Source: Octopus bimaculoides
Taxonomy: Eukaryota
Reading direction: 5' to 3'
DNA length: 64,000 bases
NCBI RefSeq assembly: GCF_001194135.2
Contig: NC_068987.1
Location: 15,693,319-15,757,318, forward strand
How positions within the stretch are numbered: position 1 is the first letter of the stretch; every line of letters begins with the position of its first letter. Shown here piece by piece: positions 5,358 to 37,540 of the stretch. Both the position numbers and the translations under genes were made by a program. A model generated the notes under the pieces. The model did not search any database and was not told the DNA's origin. It saw nothing but the letters and a program-made list of their open reading frames with translations.

Positions 5358-5793
5358 CTATCCTTACTTGATAGTCTTTTGTTTATATTTCAGTCCCTTG
5401 CCACCAGATGAACTTTCTGAAATGATATACGAATCTTGTGGAGAAGATCTGAGTACTGCTGCTTTGACACAGGTCAGTTTTTCGTTTGTTTTTATTTTTG
5501 TGCGAGGAGGAGAGGGGGGTTCTTTTTTTTTTTCCTATTTTTTTATTGAATTATATGCAGGTATGGCTGTGTGATTAAGAAGCTCGCTTCCCAACCACAT
5601 GGTTTCAGGTTCAGCCCCACTCTGCATGGTACCTTGGGTTAGCATTTTCTACCATAACCTCAGGCTGACCAAAGCCTTCTGAGTAGTGGATCTCATAGAC
5701 AGAAACTGAAAGAAGCTTGTGTGTGTGTTTTGTTTTGTCCTGAACTGTCCATAATTATTTTCTTAATGTAAACCCTTGTGGTTAATAAAGAAA

Positions 5794-7378: not shown

Positions 7379-8845
7379 TTACAAATATTCTATGATAGTT
7401 ATAAATGATTATCAAGCAGTGTCATTCATTTTCTGTATTCTGCAAAGTCATGTCTGGCCAAAGAGAAATACTACCTTACTTAGAAATAGGTAAGGTTTGA
7501 TATTTCAATGATGCAATTGTTTATTTTTAGAATGACATTGTAGGGTAGGTGTAAGAAGCCAGATCTGGCTGGTTTGGACATAAAGCAAGTAGAAAATTTG
7601 GGGCTGGATATGGCCGGTTTAAATGCTTAAGGGTTAATGAATAAATTCCATACTGACTTGGATTCTCTGCTTGTATTGAAGGAGAAGAAGCTTCTGATCA
7701 CCTGTTGAATTTGAGTCCATTTGAAATGAAGACACTTCTTCATCATATTCTTAGTGGGAAAGAATTTGTAATTAGCGCAGGTGAGTAAAATTCTTTTGCA
7801 ACTGTTCGTGTGTTGTTGTTGTTGTAAGCCTCAGGACAGTCCTGATTGGTCAAATCTATGATCAATGGCATTGTAGCCATTTCTCTCCTATCGTTCTTTC
7901 AGGCATTGCATATTTAAAACTACATTATCCAGTATGTAATTCCCTTTTCCAAGTCAGTAAGGTGTCCTTTAAAGAAGATTCGGCTGCTTTTTCTAGCAGG
8001 CTTAAACAATCACATAGAGACCCCCCCTGATCTGAAGTTGACACACTTTTAATCAACATCTTGTATGAGTAAGCTTGGTCCTTTGCATTACACATCCTAC
8101 AGGCCAGATGATGGCTTGACTACAGAGGAATAGTAACTGTGAAATGGTTTTGATGGTGTGACATTAATTGCAAATTGTGACACTTGATGCACACACAACA
8201 CTGAAGCAGCAGAAAATAATGTGCAATGGTTTTATTTAATGTGTTTGTGGATCCTGTATTGACTGTGTAATACACTGCAGTTCAAAGTATGTTATTAATG
8301 ACATACTGTAAAGTAAGTCATTAGAATCATGTGAGTATATATATATATTTATATATTTGTATGCATATATGTGTGATGTGTGTGCATGCATGATGTTTGG
8401 TCTTTGGTATTTCATCAAAGAGTAGTTTCATGTTAATTATTCTTATTATTGGTTAAGAGTAAAATATTTACCTGATTAATTAAATCTTTGAATTACCAGA
8501 ACAATAACCAGCAGCTACAATATATATATAACTTATAAGGGTGAAAAATTAAGTATTAATTTAATTAATATCAATTTAAAACCCGTGGCTTAGCATATTG
8601 AAAAATCTGAAGATTCAGAAAAATTATATTACATACATGTAAGAGGGATGACCACTAAGTGGACATCCATTATGCTAGAAGAAGACCACCTATGGTCTGA
8701 CCACTAAGAAGAGATTGATTTTGTATCTTTTCATCGCTTATGTTCTGGCGTTTGCTGAATTTTCTTGAGAACAATCTGTTCTTAGTGGTCAGATCATAGG
8801 TGGTCTTCTTCTAGCATAATGGATGTCCACTTAGTGGTCATCCCT

Positions 8846-8883
<38 letters not shown>

Positions 8884-8973
8884 NNNNNNNNNNNNNNNNN
8901 NNNNNNNNNNNNNNNNNNNNNNNNNNNNNNNNNNNNNNNNNNNNNNNNNNNNNNNNNNNNNNNNNNNNNNNNN

Positions 8974-10359: not shown

Positions 10360-10555
10360 NNNNNNNNNNACTTGTTTCAGTCATTTGACTGCGGCCATGC
10401 TGGAGCACCGCCTTTAGTCGAGCAAATCGACCCCAGGACTTATTCTTTGTAAGCCTAGTACTTATTCTATCGGTCTCTTATGCCGAACTGCTAAGTTACG
10501 GGGACGTAAACACACCAGCATCGGTTGTCAAGTGATGTTGGGGGGACAAACACAG

Positions 10556-10602
<47 letters not shown>

Positions 10603-11841
10603 TACGATGGGCTTCTTTCAGTTTCCGTCTACCAAATCCACTCACAAGGCTTTGGTCGGCCCGAGGCTATAGTAGAAGACACTTGCCCAAGGTGCTACGC
10701 AGTGAGACTGAACTCGGAACCATGTGGTTAGTAAGCAAGCTACTTACCACACAGCCACTCCTGCACCTAGGGAACAATCTTTGGACATGATCAGATCCTC
10801 ATGAATAATTCTGTGTACAGTTGACACACCAACTCCAAACTGTATGTTTATTATCTTTATAGACACACGACAGTCTTCATCCAGAAAATTGCCAATTTTC
10901 TCAACCAATTCTAATGCTCTGATGTCCCTCTTACTCCCACACTTTTCATTGTCTCTCACCTCCTCTACAATCCACAAACCTCTTGTGTCAACAAAAAACA
11001 GATGCTCAGCTCATACAAGTTAATCAATAAGCATTCTGGAGTATTTCATAATTTTCTGTAGCATTTTTGCCCAGTTTAACAAAACTTTATTGCATTATGA
11101 GCTTTGAAATTCTTTTCATATCTTGTCTGCATTCTGCAAACTAGTCAGCTGTTACAATCAGTGTTTATTAGGGTATGTTCAAAGTGCTGTTACAGCTGTC
11201 TCCTTCAATATAGAACAAAAAGTTAGCAGCTCAGCTTATAAGATGTGTCATAAAGATATAGTAAAAGTACAGTAATCTAGGACAGTTATAACTTCCTCTC
11301 CTAAAATAAACTCAAAACTTCTCACTAGACTCACTCAATTCCTACCATCATCAAAAAATGAATGCTAAAAGGGACAATGATATATTTGTGTATTTGCATG
11401 TGTGTGTTTGTATGTGCATCTGTTTTGTCTGTATCTGTGTATATGTGCACACATATGTATGTGTGTGGGCATAAGTTGATTAATTGCTTATATATTTTCT
11501 GCTCCCAGGAAAAAAAGACAAAAAGGGTAAGCAGACACTAAACTCCATATGCATTTATATATTTATGTATATGTTTATATAACTTCTATACTCAATTGTT
11601 TTTCTCTCCCTTTGTATATGTAACACTGTTTTAATATTGATAAATATTTTAATCGATTTTTTTCCCCAGTCTTACGTCTTTTCTTAATATATTGTTGTTA
11701 TTTATTTTGTCACCATACATACATACGTACATGCATACATACATATATACATATATATATGTGTATATATATATATATATATGCATATGTATATATATAT
11801 GCACATGTATGTATATGTATGTATATGTATGTATATATATA

Positions 11842-11884
<43 letters not shown>

Positions 11885-12125
11885 GCTGACACTCGTTGAT
11901 GCTGCATCGAAGGGGCCAGGGAATAGAAGAAAGAAGACATGCACCCAACACCAGAGCTGAAGACACCTCCGAAAGGAGGGGCCCCGCCACGTCAAAACGG
12001 TAGAGGAGTAGGGGCCGAAACCGGATGTGGTTCCTCCTGATGATGTCTTCAGCTAACTGGATCCTATAAAGGAGCTGTTGTGGTAGCAGACCACGAAACA
12101 TGGTTGAAATTCCTTCCTATATATG

Positions 12126-14088: not shown

Positions 14089-17000
14089 ATTCTACCTAAA
14101 TTTGTAGTCACCTGCTTATGTAAAACGTTGATTTATAAATCTTTGTTGTTACTACAATTAATAGAGCAGTATATTATCATTATTATTAATAAATACCATT
14201 ATTATTATTATTAATAATCATTAATTTTAATATGAATCCTCATTAATATTATTCTTAATGTAAATCATTAACAAGACTGTATAAATCCTTATTATTATTG
14301 AAATTATTATTATTATTAAAATATAACAATTATAATTAATACTATATATCATAAATATTAATTATATAAATCATCATTTGTATTATTTAATATAAATTAC
14401 AATAAAAATATTTCGTTCGCCAATTTATATCTATGCCCGGAACTATTATTATAACAATTATTATTGTCAATGTTGTTATTGTTATTATTATTATTTTTAT
14501 GGCAGTAAGCTGGCAGAATCGTTAGCCCATTGGACAAAATACTCTGCAGCATTTCACCTATCTTTTATGCTCTGAGTTCAAATTCCACCGAGGTCAACAT
14601 TGCCGTTCGTCTTTTTGCAGTCAATGAAATAAGTACCAGCTTTGGACTGGGGTCAATGTAATCGACTATACTCCTGTCCCCAAATTTCAGGCCTTGTGTC
14701 TATAGTAAAAAGGATTATTATTATTATTATTACTAACACGGTAAGCAGGCAGAAACATTAGTACGCCAGACAAAATGCTTTGCGGCATTTCTTTCGTCGT
14801 TACATTCTGAGTTCAAATTATGCTGAGATTGACTTTACCTTTCATCCTTTCAGGATTGATAAATTAAGGACCAGTTGAGCATTGTGATCGATGTAATCAA
14901 CTAACCCCCACCCCTAAATTTCAGGCCTTGTGCTTATTGTATAAAAGGATTATTATTATTATTATTATTATTATAATGTTCAAATTCCTCTTAGGTCGAC
15001 TTGGCCTTTCATCAATTGGAGTCGATAAATTAAGTACCAGTGAAACACGGGTCGATGTAATCGACTAATCCCCTCCCCCAAAATTTCAGGCCTTGTGCCT
15101 TTAGTAGAAAGTATTATTATTATTAATTATTAGGGTGGTAAGCTGGCAGAATTGTTAGCATGCCAGGCAAAATGCTTAGCAAACATTTCATTTATCTTTA
15201 TATTCTGAGTTCAAATTCCGCTGAGGTCGACTTTGCCTTTCATCCTTTTGGGGTCGATAAAATAAGTACAAGTTGAACACTGGGGTTGATTTAATCAACT
15301 TAGCCCCCCACCCACCCAACCTGCTGGCCATATGCCAAAATTTAAGCCATTATTGTCGTTATTATGATTATTGTGTTTGTTGTTGATATTCTTACCAGTA
15401 TTATTATTATTACCAATATTATCATTATTATTTTTGCTATTATTATTATTACTGGTATTATTATTATAATTATTGTTGTTGTTATTCTTAACATTATTAT
15501 TGTTGTTGTTGTGTTGTTATTGTTGTTGTTAGGGAAGCAGGGTTGTACAAACAGTACAATACTGGAGTAAATTTCTTCAGAAATAAACAACATTTAGCAA
15601 AATATAGCAGAGCAGCTTAAGCTTCTGTATTAATAAACACGAAATTCTGTCTGTCAGCCTGTTTGTCCAGGATCCCTGTCTACATTTGCTCTATATAGAC
15701 ATATACCTTTTTGGAATCAGGATGATCTCAGGATAGAAAACCTACCTTTTATTTGGTTCTTGAACATCCAGCATTGGGATCTGAATTAAAAGCATTTGGG
15801 TTGCTATTTCTAGCAGGTTGATTCACACCATCTTGTTTGGCGTTTGTCAGATGATGTCAGAGATCAAGACAGAGATAAATGACATTCACTTCATTAATTT
15901 TATGTTGAGATAAGAATGATGATGATGACGGTGATAAGAACTTTGGGACAAATTAGCCAACAGTTGAATGATTGCATTGCAGAATTAATTCTCATCTGTC
16001 CTTAACCTCTGACCAAGCACCACCTGGACATATAGTCATTATAGACATATTGTAGTCATGCTCTTTAGTTTTGGGTTGCAGGCCCAATTAGCCCTTCACA
16101 GGAGCTAGCTTAAAAGTTTGCATGGAGTGCAGCTTTTTAGCTAGTCATATATAAAAATCATATTATATCATTTGGACTGGTGCCTAGTATAGCAACATGC
16201 TTCACCTTGATTCAATATTCATAGCAAGGAATAACTTTGTGAAGCAATGGCATGGCTGTGTGGTTAAGAAGCTAATTTCCTAACTTCATGGTTTCGGGTT
16301 CAATCCCATTGTACATCACCTTGGGCAAGTGTCTTCTACTCCAGCACCAAGCTGATCACAACCTTGTGAGTGAACTAGGTTGACAGAAATTGAAAGGAGC
16401 CCCTTATAAATTTGTATATATTTATATATATTTATTTACTTATGTGGTGAGTGAGAGGGGAAGAGAAAGAGCGAAAGGACTAGAGTAAGGAAAGACTAAA
16501 GAAACTTCTGAAAATATTTTAAAGCATGCACAATGTGTAGTCGTTTTTTTTTTTTAAATGAACCTTTGAAGCTGTATTGTGTCCTTCGTCACATGACTGT
16601 GATATTGTATTCTCATTTATTTCTGTAATACCCCAATAATGATTTTTTTGCTTTTCAGTAAACATATGATATAAATATGATCTTATATTATCTATGACAG
16701 AAACCTGATATTGTTGTTATATCGTTTATCAAATTGGTTTGTTTTATATTGTTTGTGTTGTTCTGTTCATAATATGTATATTATATCTTTCATCCTATAA
16801 TCACAAGTATTGCAACAATATTGCAGTCTAAACAATGACTCTTTATCGATCTTGTAAATTGTATTATATTTCTTATAATCACTGGATATTTTTGGTTTTG
16901 CTTTTTGAGTGGGGGTTTTTTTTTTGATAATTTGTTTTATTTTATTGAGTGTTGAAATAGCTTTGGATGTGAACAAATATTTTTGAATGAATGTTATATT

Positions 17001-20000
17001 TATGTAGTTTGAACACTTAATTAGGTTATAATCATTATTATATTATTACATTGGTTGGAAAGGCGATGAGCTGGCAGAATCATTAGCACGCCAGGTAAAT
17101 TGCTTAAAAACATTTCATCCCTTTTTATGTTCTGAGTTCAAATTCCGCCGAGGTCGACTTTGCCTTTCATCCTTTCAGAGTTGATTAAATAAGTACCAGT
17201 TACATACTGAGGTTGATGTAATTGACTCCCCTCTGCCAAACTCTAGGCCTGGTGCCTATAGTAGAAAGGATTATTATATTGGTTGGAGCTGCAGAACTGG
17301 CAAATGCCTCTTTATAGAGTTGTCCAATTTAGAATACTCATCTACACAGCTATTATATTTTAGATGCCAGCTAGTATCTTCATCAGCATGGCAAAAGTGT
17401 CTGCAGTGCTAACTGTAATTGCTTTAAGCTGAGAGATGAACCATTCAGAAAGAATCAGAACAAATGCTTGGAACTTTTTGAGGGGAGAAAATATGAAGTT
17501 GGGAAATTTTAAGTCTTTCTCAAATGTTGTGTGTTTATAAACAGTTACTACATAAGAAATGTGAGGTTTGTTTATGCTGTATATATAAGGCTGAATGTTT
17601 ATACAGAAAAAATAAGAATTGGTTTTTAATTGTGGAACTCAAAGTAGATAAAGTTATAAATAATAATATATAGATATTGACAGTTCTATATTTAAGAGAT
17701 GAGGAATTATGTACATTATTTACATTTGACGGCTATGCCCACGGGCATATGGTGTAGTGGTTAAGAGCTTGAGCTACTAACCTCAAGATTCTGAGTTCAA
17801 TTCCAGGCAGTGACCTGAATAATGATAATAATAATAACATCGAAAAATACCCTAGGAATGAGAGACCAGGTCGGAAATTTCCCTCAAGACACCTGATGAA
17901 GGCTGAAGGGTATATCAACTGAAACGTTGTGTAACAACAAACAAGATGAGGACAAATATCCGTCAAATGTACATAATGTAAATAATGTATAGATATTGAG
18001 TTTAAAAAACCCATTTCATGAAGCAAAGTCAAAGGCTGACCATGGGACCCAAACCCACATCTTCCGTAAACACAAGGGTAACTTTTGACTTTTTCCATCC
18101 ATGGCATTTTTTGACCCTTTAGTGAGGAATCGAACATGAATCCAGTTTTCTTGTTTGTGTTGTGTTAAGCTGCATGTACGTTGGTGTGACAAATAACATT
18201 CAGTCAAAGTTTAGATAACAAGTTTTTATATAACTGCTTTTACGAAAGGGGTATAGGAAAGTGGGTTATACATCTTTTAGATGTATACCTGACTTTCCTA
18301 CATAAAATTAGAAATATAACGGAATGCTGAACTCCAGACTATCAACTTAAACAACATTTATTCAGGTGGTAAATATATAAATCTTTAGCTCTTGTTTGTT
18401 GTTACAGCTTCTGTGTGTGTGAGCTTGGTTGTTAGGACGTTGGTATGTAGATGTAAGCGAGCTGTCGAGCGTAAGTCTGAAAGATGGAGAGAGACAGCTA
18501 AACACGTCCATGCTCTATCGCTGGCCAGCAAGAAAGAGACAGAATGAAGCGGGAAAGCTTGCTTGTTGAATTCCACGCATGCGTGAGACTACGCATGCGC
18601 ACGGCGTTACTACAGGTGCATGTGAAATAGTAAAAGATGTACAAACGTGGTTGTTTCATGGCTAGTGAAAATTAGTTGGTCAGTAGTTGGCTGGACGATA
18701 AACCAGTTGGCATTAATGGTTAAAAGTTCGTCTTATGTGATTTGTGGGTACTACTAAAGCAGCGCGGACCCGAACGCGCAGTCGCGCGTCCGCGCTAGCT
18801 AGACGTGAGTGGTCGATCCTAACCCTAACCCTATTCCTAACCCTAACCCTATTCCTAACCCTAACCCTAACCCTATTCCTAACCCTATTCCTAACCCTAA
18901 CCCCAAACACGTATTCATTTGCACACGCGGGTTAGGGATAGGATCGACCACTCAAGACTAGCTAGTGCGGACGCGCGACTGCGCGTTCGGGTCCGCGCTG
19001 CTTTAGTAGTACCTGATTTGTGCTGGAACATAAGAGAATAAGGAATGTGCCAGCTACATAATGAGGTAGCTGTAATGGCTAAGAAAAAAACAAGCCAACC
19101 ACTCCAAGAGCCAGGAGTCATGAGCTCAGTCCAATTGTGAATCGTGCCGAATAAGATAAAAGAGACGAAATGTCCATCTAGAGTTTATATACCTTTCCAC
19201 CGGAAATGCTATGGCGCAAAGACTGCTGGGAGTACAGTACCCTCAAAGCGCCAACTTCCGACAACAGAGGAAGGGGATGTAACTCTGCTCTGTTCCTTTT
19301 ATTATTATTTAGCCATGACAACGCTTGCCACAACCCCATATGCTATTTGTAGCCTTATCTACTTTGAGCCTCACTATTAAAAATGACTTATTTCATGTCT
19401 CTCAAAATTTCTAAATTGCAATGACATAAATGAGAATTTGTGCTTATACAGGGTATACATGAGGCTCAAGTAGAGGCGCAATGACCTCGCGGTCATAGGA
19501 TCGCAGTTTCGATTCCCAGACCAGGCGTTGTGAGTGTTTATTGAGCGAAAACGCCTAAAGCTCCACGAGGCTCCGGCAGGGGATGGTGGCGAACCCTGCT
19601 GTACTCTTTCACCACAACTTTCTCTCACTCTTCCTTCCTGTTTCTGTTGTGCCTGTAATTCAAAGGGGCCAGCTTTGTCACACTGTGTCACGCTGAATAT
19701 CCCCGAGAACTACGTTAAGGGTACACGTATCTGTGGAGTGCTCAGCCACTTGCACGTTAATTTCACAAGCAGGCTGTTCCGTTGATCGGATCAACTGGAA
19801 CCCTCGACGTCGTAAGCGACGGAGTGCCAACAACATGAGGCTCAAAGTTTATACAGGAAATATAAGCAGTAATATTTATACAAAGACCATAGATCTTGGT
19901 GTTTATACAGGGAAATTGAGACTTAATGTTTATATAGGAAATATGATTGGTGTTTAGTGCTTAACAGGAAATATAAGGCTCATATGAGGGAACACGAGGC

Positions 20001-22035: not shown

Positions 22036-25000
22036 TACTAAGGCGGTGAGCTGGCAGAATCGTTAGCACGCTGGGCGAAATGCTTAGTGCTATTTCGTCT
22101 GTCGCTATGTTCTGAGTTCAAATTCCACTGAGGTCAACTTTGCCTTTCAGCCTTTCGGGGTCGATAATTTAAGTACCAGTGAAACACTGGGATCAATGTA
22201 ATTGACTTGTCCCCTCCCCACAAATTTCAGGCCTTGTGCCTATAGTAGAAAGGGTTATTATCACATTACTATGACACTTCAGTGTTGTGCATGATACTAA
22301 AACTATGATGTATTTTGATGAATTTATTGATATGCCTTGCATTTTCAACCACTTCCATTTCACTTATTTATGTTTTTTTACATTTTTTCTTTGTTTCTTT
22401 CTTTTCTTTATCATCTTCCATCCTGCTTTGCTCCTGGGCATTACATTTATTCATCTGCCGATTCTTCCCCCAAATGACATGCTTGTGATTGCTGTCCTCA
22501 TCAAATACAACTAAACAAACGTTTAACAAAAATTACAATGAAGAACGTACTGCCCCTGAAGACACTCATGACAGAATACGGCTTTCATTCACGGCCAAGG
22601 ACAAACACGAAGAGAAAGTATTTGCACGACTCAGTCGCTCTTATAAGGTTACTACTTAATCTTAATCCTGTTGTATTTAAATCTTAACCTTTTTTATTAC
22701 TATATCTCTGTTGAAATACAATGTCTTTGTTTCATTTAATTTGGTAATAATGAGGAATTCTGTAAATGATTTTGTCAGTATTAAACCAGTGTTTGGAACA
22801 AATTAATCTGAAATTTTGATGGAAGGTTTTAATTTAGATAATTTTTAAATGGGAAATTTGTATCATTGTCTCAGGCGGGTTGGTATCAAAAAGGTTAGTC
22901 TTTATTTTCAATCTCGTTTTTTTCACAAGCAATCAAAATCAGAAAATTAATTAGTTTACAGATTTGTATTAATTAATGTTTTCTAGTATAGTTTTGGTAA
23001 ATTCTATGATTCTATGTTGTCAAACTTTTCACAGCTTGAAAGGCAAGATAGCAAGATTGCATGATAAGTTGTTTTTATATCAGCAATACAGAGGAAAATT
23101 CTAACAAATACCAAATGATGACTTTGTGTTGAATGCTTCCCTTGAAAATAATAATTTTAGCCCTTTAACTGCAAATTTAAAATTTATGGTTATTCCTGTA
23201 ATGATGTTAAATATCTACCAAAAATTAGAATTGGTATTTCTTGCAAGTTACACTGCTTCAACAAACTTAATTTTGTGTCAACGAAAAATAATTTCAAACA
23301 TGACATTCCTCGTCAAAAGATAGATTTGTATAAAAATTGCTTTCCACAGTTAAAGTTAACAAAATTTTGAGTGGATATCTCTGATTTCTGCAGTAAAAGA
23401 GTTAAAATAATTTTTAAAGAAAATATCTAAGTATTTTATTTTATTGTTCTATTCTGTCTCATTTGAATAACAAACAGTCTAACAGGCAGCCTTCCACAAA
23501 GTTTCTGTCCATAAAATTTCATTCACATGCCTTGGGTTGATCTGAAGTATTATTTGTCCAAGAGGCAGTGCAGCAGATTTGAACCTAAAACTTTGTGACT
23601 GAGAAGTGAACTTCTTAACCATTTGATCATGTTGTGCATTATTGCATATAAACACTAATAATGCTAAATTGCTAGCATTTTAGTTATATATGCATTATAA
23701 TTATATTTATATTATTATTATTACCTATACAGAATTTTTTCCCTGCAGGCCACTTGATATGATCATTATTCTAAATAATGGTTTTATCCTTTATAAATAT
23801 ATATATATATATTAGATGAGGTGCCCCTGGGCAGAGCCAGTGGTTGGAACCAGTTACTCCTATCCATTCCCATCATGTGTTTGTAAACAAGTATGTATAT
23901 ATGATATAAGATATTTGTTTTTACATCAAACATCGTCCCTGCCCTTAAATCAGCTGAAAAAGACCAGTATTTATTTTCTCAAGCATATTGATGATTTAGG
24001 CATTTTAGGGTTAATTAATACTATTTGTTCCATGTCACACTTTTCATCATGTTAACCCTGTCTTGAATGACTTTATTCTTTAATGGTCAAGGACTAGTAA
24101 AACAATGATGTACAATATATCAGATAATCTTCTCTCTCCTCTCCCTTCTCCCTCCTATTGAAGTACCCATGACACCTATTTCTGTCCCTTTATCATACTC
24201 TAGCCTCTCATCATTTGGTACAAAGCCACCTCCCTCAATTCTACTCACCCCTCAGTTGAGTGGCCTTGTCTTGTTTTGTAAGTTATTTAGTGACCTCACT
24301 GCTGCAGGTGCCACATAAGAAAGCACTTAGTATATTCCTAAAGTGGTTGGCATTAAGAAGGACATCCAGCTGCAGAAACCATGCCAAAGCAAACAGCAGA
24401 GCTTCATGCATTCATGCAATCTTCCGACTTGCCAACTCCTTTCAAACCATTTGATGGTGCAGCTCTCAGGGTCATTGAGGCATACAAGCCGCCACACCAC
24501 ATCAAGAATTCGACCTTGTGTTAGAAGATGGTGTTTAGAACATAATTTAACATGGAATTTTGTTGCAAAGTTTTAAATCACTTTGAAATAGGAAGTTTGC
24601 ATCATAGGACCAAAGCCAATCTTGGGTGGGTTACTATCAAAGGGTTTAAAAGATTATCAGACACAGTTGTTCTCTTTTGGTATTTTCTACCTCTCATAGG
24701 CCAGTAACATATTTAGTTCCAACTTCTATCTAGCCCAAGATAATTTATTGGAAGAGGTTACCAAATTAACATTTAATGTCACTTTATCACTGAAGACCAG
24801 ATTAATTTTGTCGATGTTAAATCAGGAATAATTAAGAAATGATAATTAGGAAATTGTTGCATGAATATGAATTCAAGGTAAGGTTTATGAGTGTGAAGTT
24901 GTTCTTGATACTTATTTCTAATAAATTACCTCTTTTTTTTTTTTTCATTTCTAAGCATTTGTAATTTAGAGAAAATGAAAATATTTTCCTTATAACTTTG

Positions 25001-28000
25001 TAAATGCTGCAAATATTTTTTAAAATGTGTATATCATAATTCTATCTTCAATTTTCTTTACTCTCTAACTTCCATATTAACTATGTTACTGTTTGTTTCT
25101 TTATACTCTTTTACTGGTTCCACCCACTGGGTTCTGATCGTAGTGAGGCACCTCATCTAAATATTAAATGTATTGTTGACTTTTAGTTGCAGATTTATAT
25201 TTATTATGTTTCTGTTGATATTGTTGTTCATTTGAATTTCAAATTTAATCCTTGAGAATCATCAGGTTGATTTGTCAACAGCTTACTATTTTTTTATGGC
25301 GAGAAAGATGAGCTGATTACTTCAAGAATATTTATGATCTTTCTATGTCTATTGAGGTTTGGGCATTTTATTTTACAGGATGTTAAATAATAATAGCCTT
25401 TTTATATTATTTTGCATATCATAAAAATTGTTTGTTTTCTTCAGTGTAGAAATGTCTCAGAGCTTTATTTCCAAAGAGCTAAAACCAACTGCAAACCAAT
25501 TTCTAATGAAGTGAAAATTTATGGAGACTTAAAAAAATATTTGTTATGTGTATCAGAACCCAATATGTTTTCTAAGTTTAATCTCTCTCTCTGTCTCTCA
25601 AACAAATATATATACATTTGTTTTTGTGTGTTCCTTTAATATATCTCTTTTTGTATATTTTACTTATTTATTTGGTTTTTTTAATTTTTTTTATTTAGCT
25701 TATCTGTGGAGTCAACATTTTTGAAGTTCATTCTTCATCCTTTAGTCTATTTTCAAAGATAAATCCACTAATATAGTTTTGTAATTTTGAAGTCAATTCA
25801 CTGAGATTAACTTTCTGTTAGGTTGAGCAGAGCCAATGGCCAGTCCAAAGTTTCAATTATTAATCTTATACAGAAACAATTTTATCTATCAAAACAGAAA
25901 GAGAAAAAATTTCTAATGAGAAACATTTTCTTTGACCAAAAATGAAAAGAAAAGGCTTTTTAGACTTAAAAGTTCTTGGACCCAGAAAGTCCTTGAGGAT
26001 ATTCTATGAATCTATCATGAGGTTTTTGAATCACTTACATTTTAAAAGGTTGTTTAAATGCTTAAAGAAAATGAAAGATGATAGGTAGTGAGTATGATAA
26101 CTATATAACAAACAGATGCACAAGTCAAGGTTTCATGACTGTTATCTTGCAGCCCACTTAATACTTTCTTAAAATGGGTTTATTTAAACAAACATTTTAA
26201 AATTTTTATCAAGAATTAAAGATTGTAATGAAAAGTGAAAAAGAAAAGGAATTACTGTTTTTGCAATAATATTCCATATTGAATCAACAATCATTCATTC
26301 ATTATTGTAATAATAGCATAAGAAAATAAAATGCTTTCAATTCTGTCAGTATACAAGTGGCCCTTAAAAAACTTTCTGTGATTAAAGTAGCCTGCAATGT
26401 AATTCAAGTTGGCCAGGCCTGTCCTAGACCATTCAATTGTGATAGCTTTATTTAGTGGAACTCTCTTAAACAAGCATAAATGACCTGCATTTTTGTTGAT
26501 AACTCAGAACATGACCCAGCTTAATATACACTTATCTACTACAAACAGAACTGAACTAACTTTTATCTCAAATATAGAAAGCTAAATCAAAATAGTAATG
26601 GATACCATACGTTGCTTGTGTAAGCTAGACTTACACATTTAACTGGTTTGGTTTACTCAAGAAATTATAGTAATTTAACGCATACACAAGTAGTAAATGT
26701 AACTCTCTGCTGTTATTACAGTGTACTCTTGTATAAAGTGGTTGATGTAAGTTCTAAAATAAGCCTTTATTTCCGTCCGTCCTGAGAGGGTTGTGGGTAA
26801 GAAGTAGAGCCTTTGGTCACCACTTATATAAAGCCCTATCAGAAGCAACTGTCTGCACTCTCTGGATGGACTCTCAAGTGTGACCAACTGAGATTATGGA
26901 TATTATCCAACCATCTTGTTTTCAGTCTACACCTAGGTTTCTTGTCTATTGGCTTGGTTTGAAGAATCCATCTTGTGATTCTTCACTATGACATTCTAAT
27001 CATATGTCCATAATACAAGATTTATGACCTCCCAATGCAGAGAAATAGCAGACTGACATGGAGAGGCTCCATGATTTCCAAGCTATGTACCCTGTTGAAT
27101 AACATTACTAATTTTCAAGTTATATTTTAATAGTACTTCAAATTTCAGGAAAATCTCTTCAAAATTTTATTACACCTTTAATGGTTTCAACTTCTGGTCT
27201 GTGGCCATGCTGGGGCATCATCATAAACGAAACAACTTTGGGTTTACTACTCTAAATTGACACCTTAGCTCTGACCACACTTCACCAGTAGTTACAGCAC
27301 ACTTTTTGAACTGTTTCTATCTTTAAAAGCACTCAATTTCTAAGCTTTTATTTTATTTACAGCTGGTCATGAAATATGACCCAATTTTACTTTTTTTTAT
27401 TTTATATTTTCATTTCTTTGTTGTCTCTCCTTTTGCTATAAAGACAAACACAATGATGAAAGTATTGGGCGAGAAATTGTTCAGATTGGAAGGCGCCGTG
27501 AATCTGTATTTATTCAGGTATTTCTCTAGTTAATCAAAGCATTGTGTTCTGGTTTGAAGACGCTCTGTTCAAAGAATTTTACATACTGAGACTGTGGTCG
27601 AATGGAAGGAAAAAGATTTTGCCTTGTATTTATATTTAGAAGGAATCCTATTTTGAATATGTCTAAAAAAAAAGATACAATATTTCTAATAATTTATTTA
27701 TAATCAGAAATAATTGCATGAAATTTTGGTTATCCTGACATAAAATTGAATTTTATTAGTTATAGAATAACTATAGTGTTATAGAATAAAATTAATGGAA
27801 ATGAGCCAACAATGGAAATTTGAAATTCTTTGGGCATATCAAGAGTTATAGTTCCATTATTAGGCCTTAGTAGAAACAAAAATGGAGGAGGAGAAAACCA
27901 GAAAAACAGTATAGTATACAGTATTCTAGATCCTTTACAGTCAATCAGTTTTGCACTGGATATTAGGTAACTGGTCAGTTATGTATTAACTGTGTGCCCA

Positions 28001-31000
28001 TCAGAGATGGCAGGTATGGAAAAAAAGAGTATATCTATATATAATAGTGCTATTTCATTTGACCCTTATAACAAGAGTATTCTATTAATATGGAGGTCAT
28101 TCTATTAGCATAGATAGATTGAGCAACTGATATTAAAAAAAAGACCCATTAAAGGAACTGTGTTATGCCATGATATGGTTATCTTCATATTTCTTAGATG
28201 GGTTTTGTAAAATGTGAAGTAATGCTTTTTTTCAGAAAACTACTACATTCTCCAGCTTCTTCAGATCTTTAAACAGTTCATCCAGAAAGGAAAAAAAATA
28301 CTTCTTTGTTGTTCAACAACTAAAAGCCAGATGTTATTTCCATTTATCTTAAAATTACTTAAGTTTTATTTTAAGCAAAAGAGAAAGAAAACGCAAGTTC
28401 AAATATTTGCTATCGCTTTGTTTTGTGTTATATATGGATAGATACATCACTACTTCACTTGTAAAACTGTCTGTAATAGAGGCTTCTCTCCAGTTTTCCA
28501 ATTAATTAGTTAATGTTAAAAGCATGTGCCTTTTATAACAAGACTAAATTACAGGGTCAGTAGCTTTACTAAACGATTCATCTGTTGAAATTTGATAAAG
28601 ATCTGCTGCTGTTGTGTGTTAGAGCTATTAACAATAGCTCTGATTCAGAACACATTTACAAACTCAAGTATTTTCAATACCTTGTCTATGATTAGACTGA
28701 AAACAATACTTAGACCAAGAATAAAAATCAGAGGTTGTGACTCATTCAGTCTAGGGGAGACATAAAACTCTACAAGGCAGTGTTAGACAAAGAACTGAGC
28801 TATAAATAAATAAAATAAGAGATTTAAAAGCTGGTAACTAGTGACAGCAATTCACGAATTATTACAACAGGGAACAGCAGATCAAGATATCAAGCTAGCT
28901 TTAGATTGGAGACTTGGTTTGGTCTAATTGTTCACAACAGAGTGAACTTTATTACAATGCACTCAAGAGTCAGGTGGTGTTATTAGATAATAACAAAATG
29001 AATATTGCCACTTTAAGGGAATCCCTCCTCTTCACTATTAGATTGGAGAGGAAAAGTAATTTTTGAGTAATAAAAAAAATCAAAAAGCCGACAAGTTTGA
29101 TAAATTAAGACTTGCATACTGCTTCCTGCTTGCTGAGCTTGGTTCCTTCCCTTCACAGGCTGATAGTCCATCCCTCCCTTCACTATATCCACAGTTTTTC
29201 CTTATAAACCTGTCTACTGAATTAACACCACTATGCATTTATTTATGTATTTATTTGACTCATGTATGTGTGAATTTGGTTTCTGTTTGGGGTGGTCAAG
29301 GGGAGAGTTCTTTTTGTTTTTTTGTTATATTTTTCTCTATTAAATAATTCATTTGCATTTTATTTAAAGGTTTCTAACTGAGCCGTTTATTCTTTTGGTG
29401 GTTGCTGTTACTGTTGCTGTTGTTTTCCCCCCAATTATCGTTGTTCTTTTTCATGTTTATTTCTCAAGTTTATCTTTTTCAACTGCCATTTTGCAGGTTT
29501 CACTAATAGCCAACCACTCTTATAATATAAGGGGGGGTCTCTACCTGGTTGCTCACCCAATAAGAAATAGCAGCTAAATATCCACCATGTTGCACTTTAG
29601 TGTCTTAAAAACAAAGCAAGGTCATATTGTATAATGTAGGTGTCTAAATACATGACATCTGAACAAAAAAAAAAGATGGGATGCTCATGGCTGAAATACA
29701 TTTGATTATAGTCCTGCTAGCTCAGGGTTGCCTGGGGCTAAACAAAAGCAAGTAATATTGCCAGGATTGAATGAATAAAACTAAATAAATAGGCCAGAGG
29801 AGAATTCAGTGACCTAATGAATGAAGTGTTGACTTCTTGATTAAATAGCTGAGATTTGGCTGTTATTTCTAGCAGATTGAGCAACCTGGTAGAAGTTTCC
29901 ACATCCATATACTAAGTTAATCAATTATAATGCCACCCACCCCTCTTTTCTGGCCTTAGTTCCATAGAGAAGAAATAAGTTCTTGAATCAAAATTTGGCT
30001 GAGTAAGCTAAACGTTTACTCTAGAAAATCTAATGCTTAAGAATTCACATCATTTTGAATTAATTAAACCCTATGTCATAGTCTTGAGATTTTGCTGATG
30101 TGATTGTTTATTTTTAGAATGACATTGTAGGATAGGTGTGAGAGGCTGAATCTGACCAGTTTGAACATGAAACTGGTAGAATATTTGGGTTGGTGGATAT
30201 GGTGAGTTTAAATTCTAAAAGGTTAAGAACCCATGTGAGCCATGTGATGGTGCTGACCTAGCTAACAGTTTAAGTTTACAAACTATTATAATTATTCAAT
30301 TTCACTCCATGGAGCAGAAACATGGCCTCTCTTGAAGACTCTAACAAAGAGGATCAATGGCTTCGATAGCAGAGCCCTGGGAACCATCAAGAACATCAAA
30401 ATGGTATCATCATCTTTCCAACGAAGAACTACATGTGTGCATGCATCAGCTCACAGCCTCCCGCCTCATAGCTATCCGTCACATGTGTTGGTACGAACAT
30501 ATCCTCTGTCTCCTGCTAGATCATCCTTCCAGGGCTTTACATTCAATCGATGCAGTAGCTGTAGGCTGGAAGAGGCCTTATAGCAGATCACACGCCAGAT
30601 AGCTGGATGCGATTAAGGAAGATCTCCAGAGGCTCAATGCCATCTTGGAGGAAGCAGAGGGGCTGGCACAGATACAGAGCACTGTGATACAGAACACTGA
30701 TAGACTTGGTCAGCTGTACACATGATGACATCTCCCATCAAGCAAGCAAGAAGCAGCTTCACTCTACATACATTATTTACTTAAGCACATTACTTCTTCC
30801 TATGACATATAGGCCATTGATGACTCCTTTTTCAGCTTTGCCAGTTGGCTCTGCAGATTCCTTTTGGAGTTTGCTTCACTGCATCATGTTTCCTTGGGAG
30901 AAGGCCTTCTTTCAGGTCTTGTCAGTTTTGAATTGTTATTAATGATTCTGTAACTTTGCGTTTTTCTAGGTAGGGGTATAGGTCCTACACATACCCATTT

Positions 31001-33408: not shown

Positions 33409-36400
33409 GGCAGAAATCTTTATAGTTCTGGATAAAATACTTCGCAGACTGTAATTGTGTCCCTTAGGTTAACTTCACTTTTCATCCCTCTAGGATCACT
33501 AAAACAGTTACTAGTCAACTATGGGCTCAATATGATCAAATATACTTCCTCCCTAAAATAAATGGCCTTGTGCCTAACTCAGAAATCATTATCATTATTG
33601 AAAGCAGTGAGCTAGAAGAATCGTTAGCATGCTGAATGAAATGCATAGCAGTATGTCACCCGTTGCTATGTTCTGAGTTCAAATTCTGCCAAAGTTGACT
33701 TTACCTTTCATCCTTTCGGGTTTGATAAATTAAATACCAGTGAAACACCGGGGTTGATGTAATCATCTTGCCTCTTCTCCAAAAATTTCAGGCCTTGTGC
33801 CTATCATAGAAAGAATTATCATCATTATTCTTCTTCTTATTATTATTATTATTATTATTGTTATTATTATTATTGAACGCAGTGAACTGGCAGAATCATT
33901 AGTATGCTGGACAAAATGCTTAGCTGTATTTCAGCTATCGCTACGTTCTGTGTTCAAATTCCACCGAGGTCGATTTTGCCTTTCATCCTTTCAAGGTCAA
34001 TAAATTAAGTACCAGTGAAACACTGGCGGTCGATATAATCAACTAGTCCCCTCCCTCCAAACTTCAGGCCTTGTGCCTTTAATAGAAAGGATTATTATTC
34101 ACATTCTCAGATAAGTGAGGCAGAATTTACTGCCGAAATTTATCACAGATTTTGGAAACATCCGATACCATTTATTACTGATGTTTCCCTTTTGTTCTGT
34201 TCTTAGTCTGGACCGGCAATTGAGATAACTCAACCTGTGGATGACGGTAGTGAAGAACAAGGCGAAGAAGACGACGATGACCGCCAGGGCCAGTGGTTAC
34301 GACGACGGAGGCTAGACGGGGCCCTTAACAGAGTACCTGTTGGATTCTATGAGAAACTTTGGAAAATCTTACAAAGAGTAAGTACAAAGTTCATTTTCTT
34401 TCTGTTTTATCTACGATAGTCTTCTGTAGTTCTTTTACTGTGTTCAGTAGTGATATCAATAGAAAAGGTTATAGTGAACTTCCCATGGGGAGTGGAAAAT
34501 CCAATGTTTTGGACAGATATATACAATGAAACTATTGTAACCAATTTTTTTTCTTAGAGGATGTAAAACCCTGCTGCTAATCTTTAATTTCTCTCCTGTC
34601 AACTTTTCCCCGAAGAAGGACTGTCCAAAACATTGGATTTTCTACTCCGCATGATAAGTTCCCCATACTCTTTTTATCCATTTTACAAAATAATACAAGT
34701 CTTACTGACGCAGACCAACACGAACCTGTTTCTTTGGAGTCTGATTGATCGTGTGTGTGTGTCTGTGTGTACATGTACTCCCACACACACATTTATATGT
34801 ATATATTTTTGTTTGTATGTATGTATACAGACCTTATTTTCTATATTGTAATATCAATTCCACATATAAGGCAACAACTTGGCAGAATCGTTAACAGGTG
34901 CAGGAGTGGCTGTGTGGTAAGTAGCTTGCTTACCAACCACATGGTTCCAAGTTCAGATCCACTTCATGGCACCTTGGGTGGTCTTCTACTATAGGCTTGG
35001 GCCAACTAAAGCCTTTTGAGTGGATTTGGTAGACGGAAACTGAAAGAAGCCCATCATATATGCATATATATATATATATTTAAGTAATAAGGGTGCAAAA
35101 TTGAATATTAATTTGATTAATATCAATTTAAAACCAGTGGCCTAGCTTATTGAAAAATCTGAAGATTCAGAAAAATTATATTACATACATATAAGAGGGA
35201 TGACTACTAAGAAAAGATTGTTCTCAGAACAATATAGTCAGACCATAGGTGGTCTTCTTCTAGCATAATGGATGTCCACTTAGTGGTCATCCCTCTTATA
35301 TATATATATATATTATATATATATATATATATATATGTATATGTTTGTGTGTCTGTGTTTGTCCCCCCAGCATCGCTGGACAACCGATGCTGGTGTGTTT
35401 ATGTCCCCGTAACTTAGTGGTTCAGCAAAAGAGACTGATAGAATAAGTACTAGACTTACAAAGAATAAGTCCTGGGGTCGATTTGCTCGACTAAAGGTGG
35501 TGCTCCAGCATAGCCACAGTGAAATGACTGAAACCAACAAAAGAACGAAAAAAAAAAGAATAAAAGAATGCCAGGCAAAATGCTTAGTGACATTTCATCC
35601 GTTCTGAGTTCAAATGCCACCAAGGTTCACTTTGCCTTTCATCCTTTCAAGGTCAATGAAATAAGTACCAGTTGAAAACTGGGGGTCAATGTAATCAACT
35701 TGTACTCCTTCCCCCAAACTTGCAGGCCTTGTACTAAAATTTGAAACCAAAATTAATTCCACTTATAAGATGGCAAGCTGGCTAAATCGTTAACACATCG
35801 GGCAAAATACTCTGCAGCATTTCATGTCTTTACAGTCTGAATTCAAATTCCACCAAGGTCGGCTTTGCTTTTCATTCTTTTGGGGTCAATAAAATAAGTA
35901 CCAGTTGAGCACTGGGGTCAATGTAATCAACTTAACCACTTCCCTGAAATTGCTGGCCTTGGGCCAAAAATTGTAAATCAATATTAATTCCACATGTATC
36001 TGTCTCTGTAGGTTGAAACCCTGTCTATTGCCAACAACACTCTGGAGACAATTCTAACAAGAGAAGTAAGGATTTTTTTTTTCATTCTTTATTTGTAATC
36101 TGCATTTTTTTTTAAATATGTAATTACATTTTAATTGTAAAACATTGTCTGAATATAATAATTCAGTTTATAATTAATCACTTACGCTATTGTTTTAAGA
36201 ATTATATTTATTAAAGGACTTCCATAAAATTTATTATTCTACATGAAATTAGTGTTCTGAATAATTCTGCTGTTTCTATGAGTGAACAGTAACAGTTAGA
36301 GTAGTAGACCTAGCACACCACTCTGTTTAACACCATTTGATCAAACCAATTAGAGAACTTCCTTTGTAAATGGTGACCAAATATTTCTTATATCAAATTC

Positions 36401-37540
36401 CACGCAATAAAATACACTAGATAATGGTAATCCAAGATGGTTATGGCTGGAAGGCTTATGTCTATCCATATCTTTTTTTATCTCTCTCTCTCTCTCTCTC
36501 TGCTTACCCCCTTTCTCCTCCTCCTCTCTTCCTACCTAATATATAACTTCTTGCAAATGTATCAGTCTGTCTAACTATGTAGTTAATTGCTTCTCTTTCT
36601 ATTCACCTATTCATATTCATCTTTCTAACTACACAGATGACATCTGGAGAGTTCAAATTTGCCCTGCAAGTCGAGACAGTTCTAAACATGATTCCACAGC
36701 CAGAGTACCGACAACTGATGGTAGAAGGTATGATAGTTCTAACCACACTGCTTGATGTTGACCCCAACTGTCGGATCAAACTTCACCGTACTATCTATAT
36801 TGACAAAATTGTACAAGAGGCCAACCAGATTTACCTAAAAGAACAGGTCAGTACTTTACTACCTTCTGGTTCTACGATACACAACATCTAATTTTAAAGT
36901 ATATATATTTAAATCAAACAATTTCATTCAAATTTGAAAAAGAACCTTATGCTAAAGTTATGATACTAATATTGTTTCAAGCATCATTTTTCCATATATC
37001 TCTATGGGTTGGCTGGCAATGTTTCATGATGAGATGTCCTTCCATTTACCAACTCTTATCTGTTTTTTTAAATTCAGTATTTTTATTTTTCTGGTTCATC
37101 AACTTACATAAACTACCAGACTGGAGAGCAAATTGTTATGGTAAATATGAACAAAGTTGCTGAGTTGCCCGGACATTGTCAGTGTGAAAACATGCAGAAA
37201 CAAACGCACTCAAAAATCACTTGCCCAAGATGCTCGCAGTGAGATGTAATCTAATAGCTTTTGATTAACAAAAGTAAACTACACAATCATGTAGAAATAA
37301 GCACACACACACGCACAAAAAGAAACACACATACTCTCTTTTACCTGTTTCAGTCATTTGACTGTGGCCATGCTGGAGCACCGCCTTTAGTCGAGCAAAT
37401 CGACCCCAGGACTTATTCTTTGGATGCCTAGTACTTATTCTATCAGTCTCTTTTGCCGAACCGCTAAGTTACGGGGACCTAAACACACCACCATTGGTTG
37501 TCAAGCGATGTTGGGGGGACACAGACACACAAACATATAT

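What the first reader, a model, noticed from the sequence alone, without database searches (positions are those of the whole stretch)
22283..22647. Hidden PHKA exon behind a ~260-nt AG-exclusion zone, likely mutually exclusive with exon 27444-27517
Seen: no AG dinucleotide from 22283 to 22541, with a long pyrimidine tract at about 22340-22470. The first AG opens a phase-1 frame [25 protein letters not shown] ending at aaa|gtattt. This gives 74 nt, the same length, phases (1 to 0) and donor hexamer as exon 27444-27517, and both encode DKH. One 1-to-0 exon is required to link 7780 to 34207, and two would frameshift. Known: long AG-exclusion zones mark distant branch points typical of regulated or mutually exclusive exons, and the mammalian alpha subunit is alternatively spliced in this multiphosphorylation region. 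Inference: a frame-enforced exon switch, with an optional 30-nt extension ([10 protein letters not shown], donor at 22648).
Basis: partly seen in the sequence, partly recalled or inferred. Interest (0 to 1): 0.72.

Follow-up and report, generated by a model that had tools for sequence, protein, structure and literature searches.

The report
Annotated alternative PHKA exon in octopus
The "hidden" exon is a real exon of the octopus phosphorylase kinase alpha gene that is already in RefSeq; it is 104 bases long rather than 74, it is used instead of the exon at 27444-27517, and this either/or pair is shared by octopus, cuttlefish, snails and oysters.

Summary
No AG occurs between 22281/82 and the acceptor at 22542/43 (261 nt). 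Composition predicts 7.0 AG, and the reverse dinucleotide GA occurs 9 times. The pyrimidine tract lies 70-200 nt upstream of the acceptor.

The exon is real, but it is not hidden and it is not 74 nt. The window is Octopus bimaculoides PHKA. Splicing 7780|22544-22647|34207 gives an exact substring of RefSeq isoform X4, and of X1/X2/X7 when an 18-nt microexon (11509-11526) is added. Splicing through 27444-27517 gives X6 and X5.

Of 29 cephalopod protein models or transcript ORFs, 20 carry the 104-nt exon A and 9 carry exon B. None carries both, neither, or the 74-nt form. Two cDNA-like cuttlefish contigs show both splice forms.

Argonauta keeps exon A (12 synonymous and 2 non-synonymous codon changes; all 3 changes in the "extension" are synonymous), exon B, and a 215-nt AG-free zone. 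Oyster and pond snail keep the order A then B, and both exons there are also 3n+2 in length. The frame-enforced switch is therefore old within molluscs.

A distant branch point is plausible but unproven. This is a correct call on a feature that was already annotated, so interest is low to moderate.

The parts
7682..7780 (+). Upstream constitutive PHKA exon (…[13 protein letters not shown]), ending in phase 1 (one base, G, carried over)
   Evidence: tblastn with PHKA fragments plus splice sites. It is part of exact matches to RefSeq isoforms.
11509..11526 (+). 18-nt cassette microexon encoding GKKDKK (phase 1 to 1); it combines with either exon A or exon B
   Evidence: Regex hit cccag|GAAAAAAAGACAAAAAGG|gtaagc. 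Present in isoforms X1/X2/X7 with A and X5 with B. Conserved in Argonauta at L001:352-369 and in a cuttlefish transcript.
22283..22541 (+). AG-exclusion zone upstream of the exon A acceptor (261 nt between successive AGs)
   Evidence: 0 AG against 7.0 expected, GA = 9, shuffle P = 1.5e-4. Argonauta has a 215-nt counterpart (P = 4e-3) although the intron sequence is poorly alignable.
22296..22302 (+). Candidate distant branch site TACTAAA (branch A at 22300, 243 nt from the acceptor), at the 5' edge of the AG-free zone and upstream of the pyrimidine tract
   Evidence: Heptamer scan. Argonauta has TTGTAAC at -196, likewise about 20 nt inside its AG-free zone. Inferred, not mapped.
22340..22470 (+). 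Displaced polypyrimidine tract (79% C+T, CU-rich)
   Evidence: The last 40 nt before the acceptor are only 37.5% pyrimidine.
22510..22516 (+). Proximal branch-site-like motif within CAACTAAAC (branch A at 22514, -29), conserved in Argonauta at -46; rival branch point
   Evidence: Alignment island and heptamer scan.
22544..22647 (+). Exon A, 104 nt, phase 1 to 0, encoding (E)[34 protein letters not shown]; acceptor aatgaag|, donor AAG|gttact at 22648
   Evidence: Exact substring of O. bimaculoides XP_014776196.1 (X4), and of X1/X2/X7 with the microexon. Found in O. sinensis, O. vulgaris, Acanthosepion and Argonauta models and in cDNA-like contig L003. Against Argonauta: 12 synonymous and 2 non-synonymous codon changes. 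blastn conservation is confined to 22542-22657.
22618..22623 (+).
   Evidence: 0 of 29 cephalopod models or transcripts join …DKHEEK to SGP/AGP. The oyster has no GT at this position.
27444..27517 (+). Exon B, 74 nt, phase 1 to 0, encoding (D)[24 protein letters not shown], with a strong adjacent pyrimidine tract and donor CAG|gtattt; the alternative to exon A
   Evidence: Exact substring of XP_052825242.1 (X6) and, with the microexon, XP_052825241.1 (X5). Conserved in Argonauta with about 60 nt of each flanking intron. Present in cDNA-like contig L004.
34207..34377 (+). Downstream constitutive exon (SGPAIEIT…[32 protein letters not shown]), phase 0 to 0; it carries the premature stop when A+B or neither is used

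Best explanation
The window is the 3' part of the Octopus bimaculoides gene for the phosphorylase kinase regulatory alpha subunit. Between the constitutive exons ending at 7780 and starting at 34207 lie three regulated exons:
- an 18-nt cassette microexon (11509-11526, GKKDKK);
- exon A (22544-22647, 104 nt);
- exon B (27444-27517, 74 nt).

Exons A and B are mutually exclusive and unrelated in sequence. Each is 3n+2 nt and runs from phase 1 to phase 0. Exactly one must therefore be spliced in. A+B gives a stop 24 codons into the next exon, and skipping both gives a stop after 5 codons. Both errors lie upstream of three more exon junctions, so the mRNAs are predicted targets of nonsense-mediated decay.

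The switch replaces one 25-35-residue piece of the disordered multiphosphorylation segment, just before the conserved basic stretch [19 protein letters not shown]. Exon B carries a canonical PKA-type RRRES site. Exon A carries two R-L-S motifs (RIRLSF and FARLSR), and the second aligns with the mammalian EFRRLS PKA site (Ser1018).

Exon A has a weak, atypical 3' splice site. The 40 nt before its AG are A-rich, the pyrimidine tract sits 70-200 nt upstream, and no AG occurs for 261 nt. The most likely reading is a distant branch point near 22300, followed by a CU-rich tract that can hold regulators. That would make A the regulated member and B, with its strong splice sites, the default competitor.

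Shown: the exon, its borders, the either/or pattern in gene models and cuttlefish transcripts, the frame logic, and conservation. Inferred: decay of mis-spliced forms, the branch-point position, the regulators, and the phosphorylation consequences.
For: Gene identity: PHKA homologues with PF00723 and PF19292. The exon map ends in …LECAIS*, which I read as a prenylation-type CaaX ending from my own knowledge.

Exon A is real and 104 nt: spliced models from the window are exact substrings of RefSeq X4, X1/X2/X7, X6 and X5. Counts are 20 A-long, 9 B, 0 both, 0 neither and 0 short form among 29 cephalopod models or ORFs. Intron-free contigs L003 (SRR8281682) and L004 (ERR12945499) show c|A(104)|e and c|micro|B|e.

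Coding constraint: Argonauta exon A has 12 synonymous and 2 non-synonymous codon differences, 13 of 16 base differences fall at third codon positions, and all 3 differences in the last 30 nt are synonymous. Nucleotide conservation stops about 10 nt after the 22648 donor.

Frame logic.

Deep conservation: the order A then B, both 3n+2, holds in oyster (104 and 62 nt) and Lymnaea (95 and 77 nt). A-like and B-like isoforms from the same species occur in Mytilus, Biomphalaria, Bradybaena and Ruditapes.

AG-free zone: for octopus and for Argonauta. AGEZ of 100 nt or more is linked to alternative exons and distant branch points in human (PMC1431707).

Function of the region: multiphosphorylation segment and Ser1018 (PMC11950179); alignment of FARLS with EFRRLS.
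Against: Most supporting protein sequences are computational gene models, and I could not inspect their RNA-seq support.

Direct transcript evidence comes from cuttlefish-like contigs, not from O. bimaculoides.

Protein models cannot show frameshifted A+B or skipped mRNAs, so strict exclusivity at the RNA level is untested.

A conserved AACTAAA at a canonical distance (-29 in octopus, -46 in Argonauta) could be the real branch point. The AG-free zone is short in oyster (36 nt) and only 94 nt in Lymnaea, so it is not an essential part of the switch.

The FARLS/EFRRLS correspondence rests on a short alignment of low-complexity sequence.
Confidence: 0.9

Rival explanations
1. One reading: the main form of the exon is 74 nt (22544-22617, donor AAA|gtattt), matched in length to exon B, and 22618-22647 is an optional extension.
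For: The GT at 22618 exists and keeps the frame. It is retained in Argonauta and cuttlefish as a Val codon, GTA or GTT.
Against: None of 29 cephalopod models or ORFs uses it. The 30 nt show only synonymous change. The FA[KR]LS motif they encode is conserved in most mollusc A-like sequences examined. The oyster exon is 104 nt with no GT there. The site lacks G at -1 and mismatches the donor consensus at +4 and +5 (sequence).
Confidence: 0.07
2. The branch point of exon A is proximal (AACTAAA, branch A at 22514, -29). The AG-free, pyrimidine-rich zone is then an upstream binding platform for regulators or a composition effect, not the span between branch point and 3' splice site.
For: CAACTAAAC is one of the few islands conserved between octopus and Argonauta in this intron, and it sits at -29 and -46, which are canonical distances.
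Against: There is no pyrimidine tract between this motif and the AG (37.5% and 42.5% pyrimidine in the last 40 nt). AG is specifically absent over 215-261 nt in two species while GA is at expectation. Both species have a good branch-site heptamer about 20 nt inside the 5' edge of the zone, followed by the pyrimidine tract.
Confidence: 0.35
3. 22544-22647 is a chance open frame or pseudo-exon in a 26-kb intron, next to an interspersed repeat, and is not used.
For: It lies about 300 nt downstream of an interspersed repeat copy, and its 3' splice site looks weak.
Against: It shows 94% amino-acid identity with mostly synonymous change in Argonauta. It is present in RefSeq and GenBank models of five cephalopods and in an intron-free transcript contig. 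An orthologous 104-nt exon exists in oyster.
Confidence: 0.01
4. A and B are not strictly exclusive: A+B or double-skipped transcripts are made in quantity as regulated unproductive splicing that tunes PHKA level.
For: Both errors give early stops suited to nonsense-mediated decay. Protein databases would not record such forms.
Against: There is no positive evidence. The two full-length cuttlefish transcript contigs examined at nucleotide level each carry exactly one of the two exons.
Confidence: 0.15

Closest known systems
RefSeq gene models of Octopus bimaculoides 'probable phosphorylase b kinase regulatory subunit alpha' (XP_014776193.1/94.1/96.1/97.1 with exon A; XP_052825241.1/42.1 with exon B)
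   Same: Identical. The window's spliced exons are exact substrings of these proteins.
   Different: Nothing at the protein level. The annotation says nothing about the AG-free zone, the branch point or the frame logic.
Differential splicing of the multiphosphorylation domain of mammalian PHKA1/PHKA2 (Wullrich et al. 1993, J Biol Chem 268:23208, cited in PMC11950179)
   Same: Same protein region, between …SGKEF… and …RQGQW…RRRRLDGA. Mammalian isoforms with and without VEFRRLSISAESQ are visible in my hits. The FRRLS motif aligns with FARLS of exon A.
   Different: In the mammalian hits the PKA-site piece behaves as a cassette (present or absent). In molluscs it is one member of an either/or pair, and the order of the B-like and A-like sequence differs. 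I could not read the 1993 paper; only its title was available.
Frame-policed mutually exclusive exons such as FGFR2 IIIb/IIIc (from my own knowledge)
   Same: Two adjacent exons, neither a multiple of 3 in length, where double inclusion or double skipping shifts the frame and the products are removed by nonsense-mediated decay.
   Different: FGFR2 IIIb and IIIc are homologous duplicates. Here A (104 nt) and B (74 nt) show no similarity.
Distant-branch-point exons marked by AG exclusion zones (Gooding et al. 2006, PMC1431707; alpha-tropomyosin exon 3 is the example I recall)
   Same: AG-free zone well over 100 nt, pyrimidine tract displaced upstream, a branch-site-like motif at the 5' edge, and an alternatively spliced exon.
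   Different: In alpha-tropomyosin, as I recall it, the distant branch point lies too close to the preceding exon's donor and so enforces exclusivity sterically. Here the zone precedes the first exon of the pair, after a 10-15-kb intron, so it cannot act that way. The branch point has not been mapped.

Membership tests
Phosphorylase kinase regulatory subunit alpha/beta (PHKA/PHKB) | Glycoside-hydrolase-15-like domain (PF00723) plus the KPBB_C domain (PF19292) | tested here: met
   Full-length proteins that contain the window's exons exactly (P0363, P0369, P0362, P0241) carry both precomputed Pfam hits. The window itself holds only the C-terminal part.
Phosphorylase kinase regulatory subunit alpha/beta (PHKA/PHKB) | Conserved basic stretch [23 protein letters not shown] just downstream of the variable multiphosphorylation segment | tested here: met
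   Encoded by exon 34207-34377 and invariant across more than 200 homologues. PMC11950179 places the multiphosphorylation segment next to a predicted calmodulin-binding region at residues 1046-1086; mapping that region onto this stretch is my inference.
Phosphorylase kinase regulatory subunit alpha/beta (PHKA/PHKB) | C-terminal CaaX prenylation box (recalled from my own knowledge) | tested here: met
   The last exon ends …LECAIS*.
Phosphorylase kinase regulatory subunit alpha/beta (PHKA/PHKB) | Alpha rather than beta subunit | not tested
   Rests on the source names ('regulatory subunit alpha') and the presence of a multiphosphorylation-type insert. No phylogeny was made.
Mutually exclusive exon pair | Adjacent exons of which mature mRNAs contain exactly one | tested here: met
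   29 cephalopod models or ORFs: 20 with A, 9 with B, 0 with both, 0 with neither. Two intron-free transcript contigs carry one each. Caveat: most are predicted models, and frameshifted mRNAs would not appear among proteins.
Mutually exclusive exon pair | Both exons keep the same entry and exit phase; both or neither breaks the frame | tested here: met
   104 and 74 nt, both phase 1 to 0. A+B and double skipping give early stops. The same holds in oyster (104 and 62 nt) and Lymnaea (95 and 77 nt).
Mutually exclusive exon pair | Removal of mis-spliced forms by nonsense-mediated decay | not testable with these tools
   Needs RNA data with the decay pathway blocked.
Homologous (tandem-duplicated) mutually exclusive exons | The two exons are similar in sequence and length | tested here: not met
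   BLASTP finds no alignment even at E = 100. Lengths are 104 and 74 nt. The shared DKH tripeptide is restricted to the cephalopod sequences.
Distant-branch-point exons (AGEZ class, Gooding et al. 2006) | [quoted passage not shown] | tested here: met
   261 nt in octopus and 215 nt in Argonauta; AG absent while GA is at expectation.
Distant-branch-point exons (AGEZ class, Gooding et al. 2006) | Branch-site consensus followed by a pyrimidine tract at the 5' end of the zone | tested here: inconclusive
   TACTAAA at -243 and TTGTAAC at -196 are each followed by a 72-79% pyrimidine tract. A conserved AACTAAA at -29 and -46 competes with them.
Distant-branch-point exons (AGEZ class, Gooding et al. 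2006) | Experimentally mapped branch point more than about 100 nt from the AG | not testable with these tools
   Needs lariat sequencing or primer extension.

The most novel reading that the evidence does not exclude
The A/B choice may be an ancient molluscan module, older than the split of cephalopods, gastropods and bivalves, that swaps two unrelated phospho-regulatory cassettes in phosphorylase kinase alpha. Exon A would then be the orthologue of the vertebrate exon that carries the Ser1018 PKA site, which is itself optional in mammals. If so, regulated inclusion of that site predates the protostome-deuterostome split, and octopods later added a distant-branch-point 3' splice site to control it.
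Probability: 0.3. Interest if true: 0.45.

Novelty: already known. Interest (0 to 1): 0.22.

Why it matters
For genome annotation this is a positive control. A reader working from raw sequence alone recovered a real alternative exon that RefSeq annotates, using an AG-free zone and phase arithmetic.

Biologically, the pair swaps the part of phosphorylase kinase alpha that in mammals receives PKA and autophosphorylation signals. The two isoforms probably couple glycogen breakdown to different upstream kinases or tissues.

The new points are modest:
- the either/or layout (A then B, both 3n+2) is conserved in three mollusc classes;
- exon A is exactly 104 nt in oyster and octopus;
- octopods share a displaced pyrimidine tract with a 215-261-nt AG-free zone, which would make a compact test case for distant branch points outside vertebrates.

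I found no paper in the searched library describing any of this, but the exon itself is not new.

Tried and rejected
1. The first protein search, with a 115-aa junction peptide, returned only proteins of 201 aa or less and no octopus sequence. Comparing searches showed that hits never exceeded 1.75 times the query length (201, 621). I therefore reached full-length cephalopod isoforms with an artificial 968-aa query: the window's exons twice, once with A and once with B.

2. Genomic loci for the cuttlefish Acanthosepion could not be fetched. One look-up found no record and the other gene range was too long. The AG-free zone could therefore be compared only with Argonauta among cephalopods.

3. 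The idea that A and B are duplicated homologues was rejected.

4. The AG-free run at 11668-11911, just after the microexon, was examined as a possible second zone. It is a TA/TG microsatellite followed by no usable frame.

5. ARAGORN found no tRNA in the repeat upstream of the zone.

6. I did not search for competing RNA structures (docking and selector sites). Intron conservation between octopus and Argonauta is limited to about 10 nt after exon A and about 60 nt on each side of exon B, too little for a covariation test with two species.

7. No RNA-seq reads of O. bimaculoides could be examined with these tools.
Full report
**Observation**

Reading 22100-22800 and 27300-27650 and scanning the whole window for AG confirms the description.
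- The last AG upstream is at 22281/82 and the next is at 22542/43, a 261-nt run.
- The AG at 22542/43 opens a frame which, with the G left over from the exon ending at 7780, reads [25 protein letters not shown] up to AAA|gtattt (74 nt), or on through [10 protein letters not shown] to AAG|gttact (104 nt).
- The run is the longest AG-free stretch in the window that is neither an assembly gap nor a simple repeat.
- With 65 A and 28 G in the zone, shuffles predict 7.0 AG, and only 0.015% of shuffles have none. GA occurs 9 times against 7.0 expected, so the absence is specific to AG.
- The other nine exons of the gene in this window have AG-free zones of 19-102 nt.
- 22340-22470 is 79% pyrimidine. 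The 40 nt next to the acceptor are only 37.5% pyrimidine, against 77.5% before exon 27444-27517.

**Gene context**

tblastn with PHKA fragments from the first search, combined with splice sites, gave this exon map on the + strand:

| Exon | Coordinates | Note |
|---|---|---|
| upstream exons (tblastn matches; borders not refined) | about 354-569, 1560-1645, 3427-3510, 4184-4270 | |
| a | 5394-5472 | |
| b | 6971-7100 | |
| c | 7682-7780 | ends in phase 1 |
| B | 27444-27517 | 74 nt, phase 1 to 0 |
| e | 34207-34377 | phase 0 to 0 |
| f | 36012-36065 | |
| g | 36637-36846 | |
| h | 38535-38711 | ends …LECAIS* (range includes the stop codon) |

One exon of length 3n+2 is needed between 7780 and 34207. 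With both candidates, or with neither, the frame breaks. A+B stops 24 codons into exon e. Skipping both stops after 5 codons.

**The exon is real and already annotated**

The protein search tool never returned hits longer than 1.75 times the query length. I reached full-length proteins with a 968-aa composite query.

The window is Octopus bimaculoides. Translations of my splice models are exact substrings of its RefSeq isoforms:

| Splice model | RefSeq isoform |
|---|---|
| c-A(22544-22647)-e | XP_014776196.1 (X4) |
| c-microexon-A-e | X1, X2, X7 (XP_014776193.1, XP_014776194.1, XP_014776197.1) |
| c-B-e | XP_052825242.1 (X6) |
| c-microexon-B-e | XP_052825241.1 (X5) |

I collected 29 cephalopod models or transcript ORFs, from O. 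bimaculoides, O. sinensis, O. vulgaris, Acanthosepion pharaonis and Logan assemblies. Twenty carry the 104-nt exon A and nine carry exon B. None carries both, neither, or the 74-nt form.

Two Logan contigs are intron-free, with full-length ORFs and UTRs, so they are mRNA assemblies. At nucleotide level they show c|A(104 nt)|e (L003, SRR8281682) and c|microexon|B(74 nt)|e (L004, ERR12945499).

**True borders of exon A**

- An Argonauta hians model (P0125) reads …[35 protein letters not shown]|SGPTIEIT….
- Its genomic locus L001 holds exon A at 10020-10123, exon B at 10812-10885 and exon e from 17521.
- Octopus and Argonauta exon A differ at 16 bases, 13 of them at third codon positions. That is 12 synonymous and 2 non-synonymous codon changes.
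- blastn conservation runs from the acceptor AG to about 10 nt past the 22648 donor and then stops (22542-22657, 86%).
- The oyster orthologue is exactly 104 nt (L002:29722-29825, donor AAG|gtttct) and has no GT at the position of the 74-nt donor.

The 22648 donor is therefore the real one. The equal 74-nt lengths and the shared gtattt hexamer are coincidences. A and B peptides show no similarity.

**Age of the switch**

Protein isoforms from many molluscs fall into two classes between …SGKEF… and …RQGQW…:
- A-like: acidic stretch, [RK]LSV, …EEA.., F-A-[KR]-L-S-[RK].
- B-like: …G-E-x-I-[VIM]… followed by a basic-x-Ser site such as RRRES, SRKKSS or SRRKSV.

Both classes occur in the same species in Mytilus, Biomphalaria, Bradybaena and Ruditapes.

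At genome level the order c, A, B, e and the 3n+2 lengths hold in two further classes:
- Magallana gigas: 104 and 62 nt.
- Lymnaea stagnalis: 95 and 77 nt. Here the A-like exon is not in the deposited model.

The frame-enforced pair therefore predates the divergence of cephalopods, gastropods and bivalves.

**3' splice site of exon A**

Argonauta has a 215-nt AG-free zone directly upstream of exon A (0 AG against 4.4 expected, GA = 4, shuffle P = 0.004). The intron there aligns poorly with octopus. AG avoidance is therefore kept without general sequence conservation.

Both species share these features:
- an A-rich last 40 nt;
- a 72-79% pyrimidine tract further upstream;
- a branch-site-like heptamer about 20 nt inside the 5' edge of the zone (TACTAAA at -243 in octopus, TTGTAAC at -196 in Argonauta).

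This fits the class of distant-branch-point exons defined by AG exclusion zones, which are enriched in alternative exons (PMC1431707).

A conserved CAACTAAAC island at -29 (octopus) and -46 (Argonauta) is a rival proximal branch site. I put the distant branch point at about 0.55-0.6.

The zone is short in oyster (36 nt) and moderate in Lymnaea (94 nt). It is a lineage feature of the regulation, not of the switch itself.

It also cannot enforce exclusivity by crowding, because it precedes the first exon of the pair. The A-B intron is 4.8 kb in octopus, about 690 nt in Argonauta and about 540 nt in oyster.

**Likely function**

The region corresponds to the flexible multiphosphorylation segment of mammalian alpha subunits. 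That segment holds the PKA site Ser1018, autophosphorylation sites and further phosphoserines, and it lies next to a predicted calmodulin-binding region (PMC11950179). That paper cites Wullrich et al. [quoted passage not shown]

My vertebrate hits include isoforms with and without VEFRRLSISAESQ. In an alignment, the FARLS of exon A falls on EFRRLS. This is suggestive only, because the sequence is short and of low complexity.

Exon B supplies a textbook RRxS site (RRRES). Exon A supplies two R-L-S motifs. The inference is that the switch changes which kinases can act on the subunit. This is not shown.

**Verdict**

It is wrong on the exon's 3' border and on the supporting arguments drawn from it. 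It also missed a microexon, and the exon is not hidden, because it is in RefSeq for this genome. The feature is already known. The conservation across molluscs and the octopod AG-free zone are small additions.

Noticed in passing
window 11509-11526: An 18-nt cassette microexon (GKKDKK, phase 1 to 1) lies between the exon ending at 7780 and exons A/B, and is used with either of them. It is conserved in Argonauta (L001:352-369, GKKEKN) and in cuttlefish transcripts (GKKRKT). The oyster has three different small cassette exons in the same intron (L002:27370-27399, 27622-27669, 28033-28071).
   Followed up: yes
window 22116-22208; also 15209-15301, 17150-17234, 33700-33728, 33966-34034, 59230-59258: An interspersed repeat family with core TTTGCCTTTCANCCTTTCGGGGTCGATAA has at least 5 copies in the window against 0 expected, and also occurs in Argonauta. 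One copy sits directly upstream of the AG-free zone. ARAGORN finds no tRNA in it. Argonauta has a different repeat at the equivalent place (L001:9600-9740).
   Followed up: partly
outside the window (upstream part of the same gene), seen in proteins P0357-P0372: The octopus and cuttlefish isoforms show a second alternative pair whose two versions look related in sequence by eye (…FLDRHHFFAVLDPQFIVDFMRWEISFLKSNWKATKGRPTLIVVVQPWVL… against …FLDNLQFYLPLDNSFLMDNFKSDVETLSHQWRMLGRPVIVFPVSKMML…). They also show an optional segment (A)DGSSSKSSSPGSPKTPK.
   Followed up: no
L005:45231-45325 (Lymnaea stagnalis): An A-like exon (VPCEFGETKLSVKSLHPKNETTRFARLSCRNK, 95 nt) lies in an intron of the deposited Lymnaea gene model, which uses only the B-like exon. 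It is probably an unannotated alternative exon in that genome.
   Followed up: partly
window 27381-27443 and 27518-27582: About 60 nt of intron on each side of exon B are conserved between octopus and Argonauta (75% over 27381-27582). Conservation around exon A ends about 10 nt past its donor. These flanks may hold splicing regulatory elements for exon B.
   Followed up: no
window 36012-36065: A 54-nt exon ([18 protein letters not shown]) was not picked up by tblastn because it is short and diverged. It was found by a splice-site and phase search and confirmed by the RefSeq proteins.
   Followed up: yes
window 8884-8973, 10360-10369, 42735-42848, 48207-48602, 55973-55982, 62253-62783: Runs of N (assembly gaps). 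The two longest produce the largest apparent AG-free runs in the window.
   Followed up: yes
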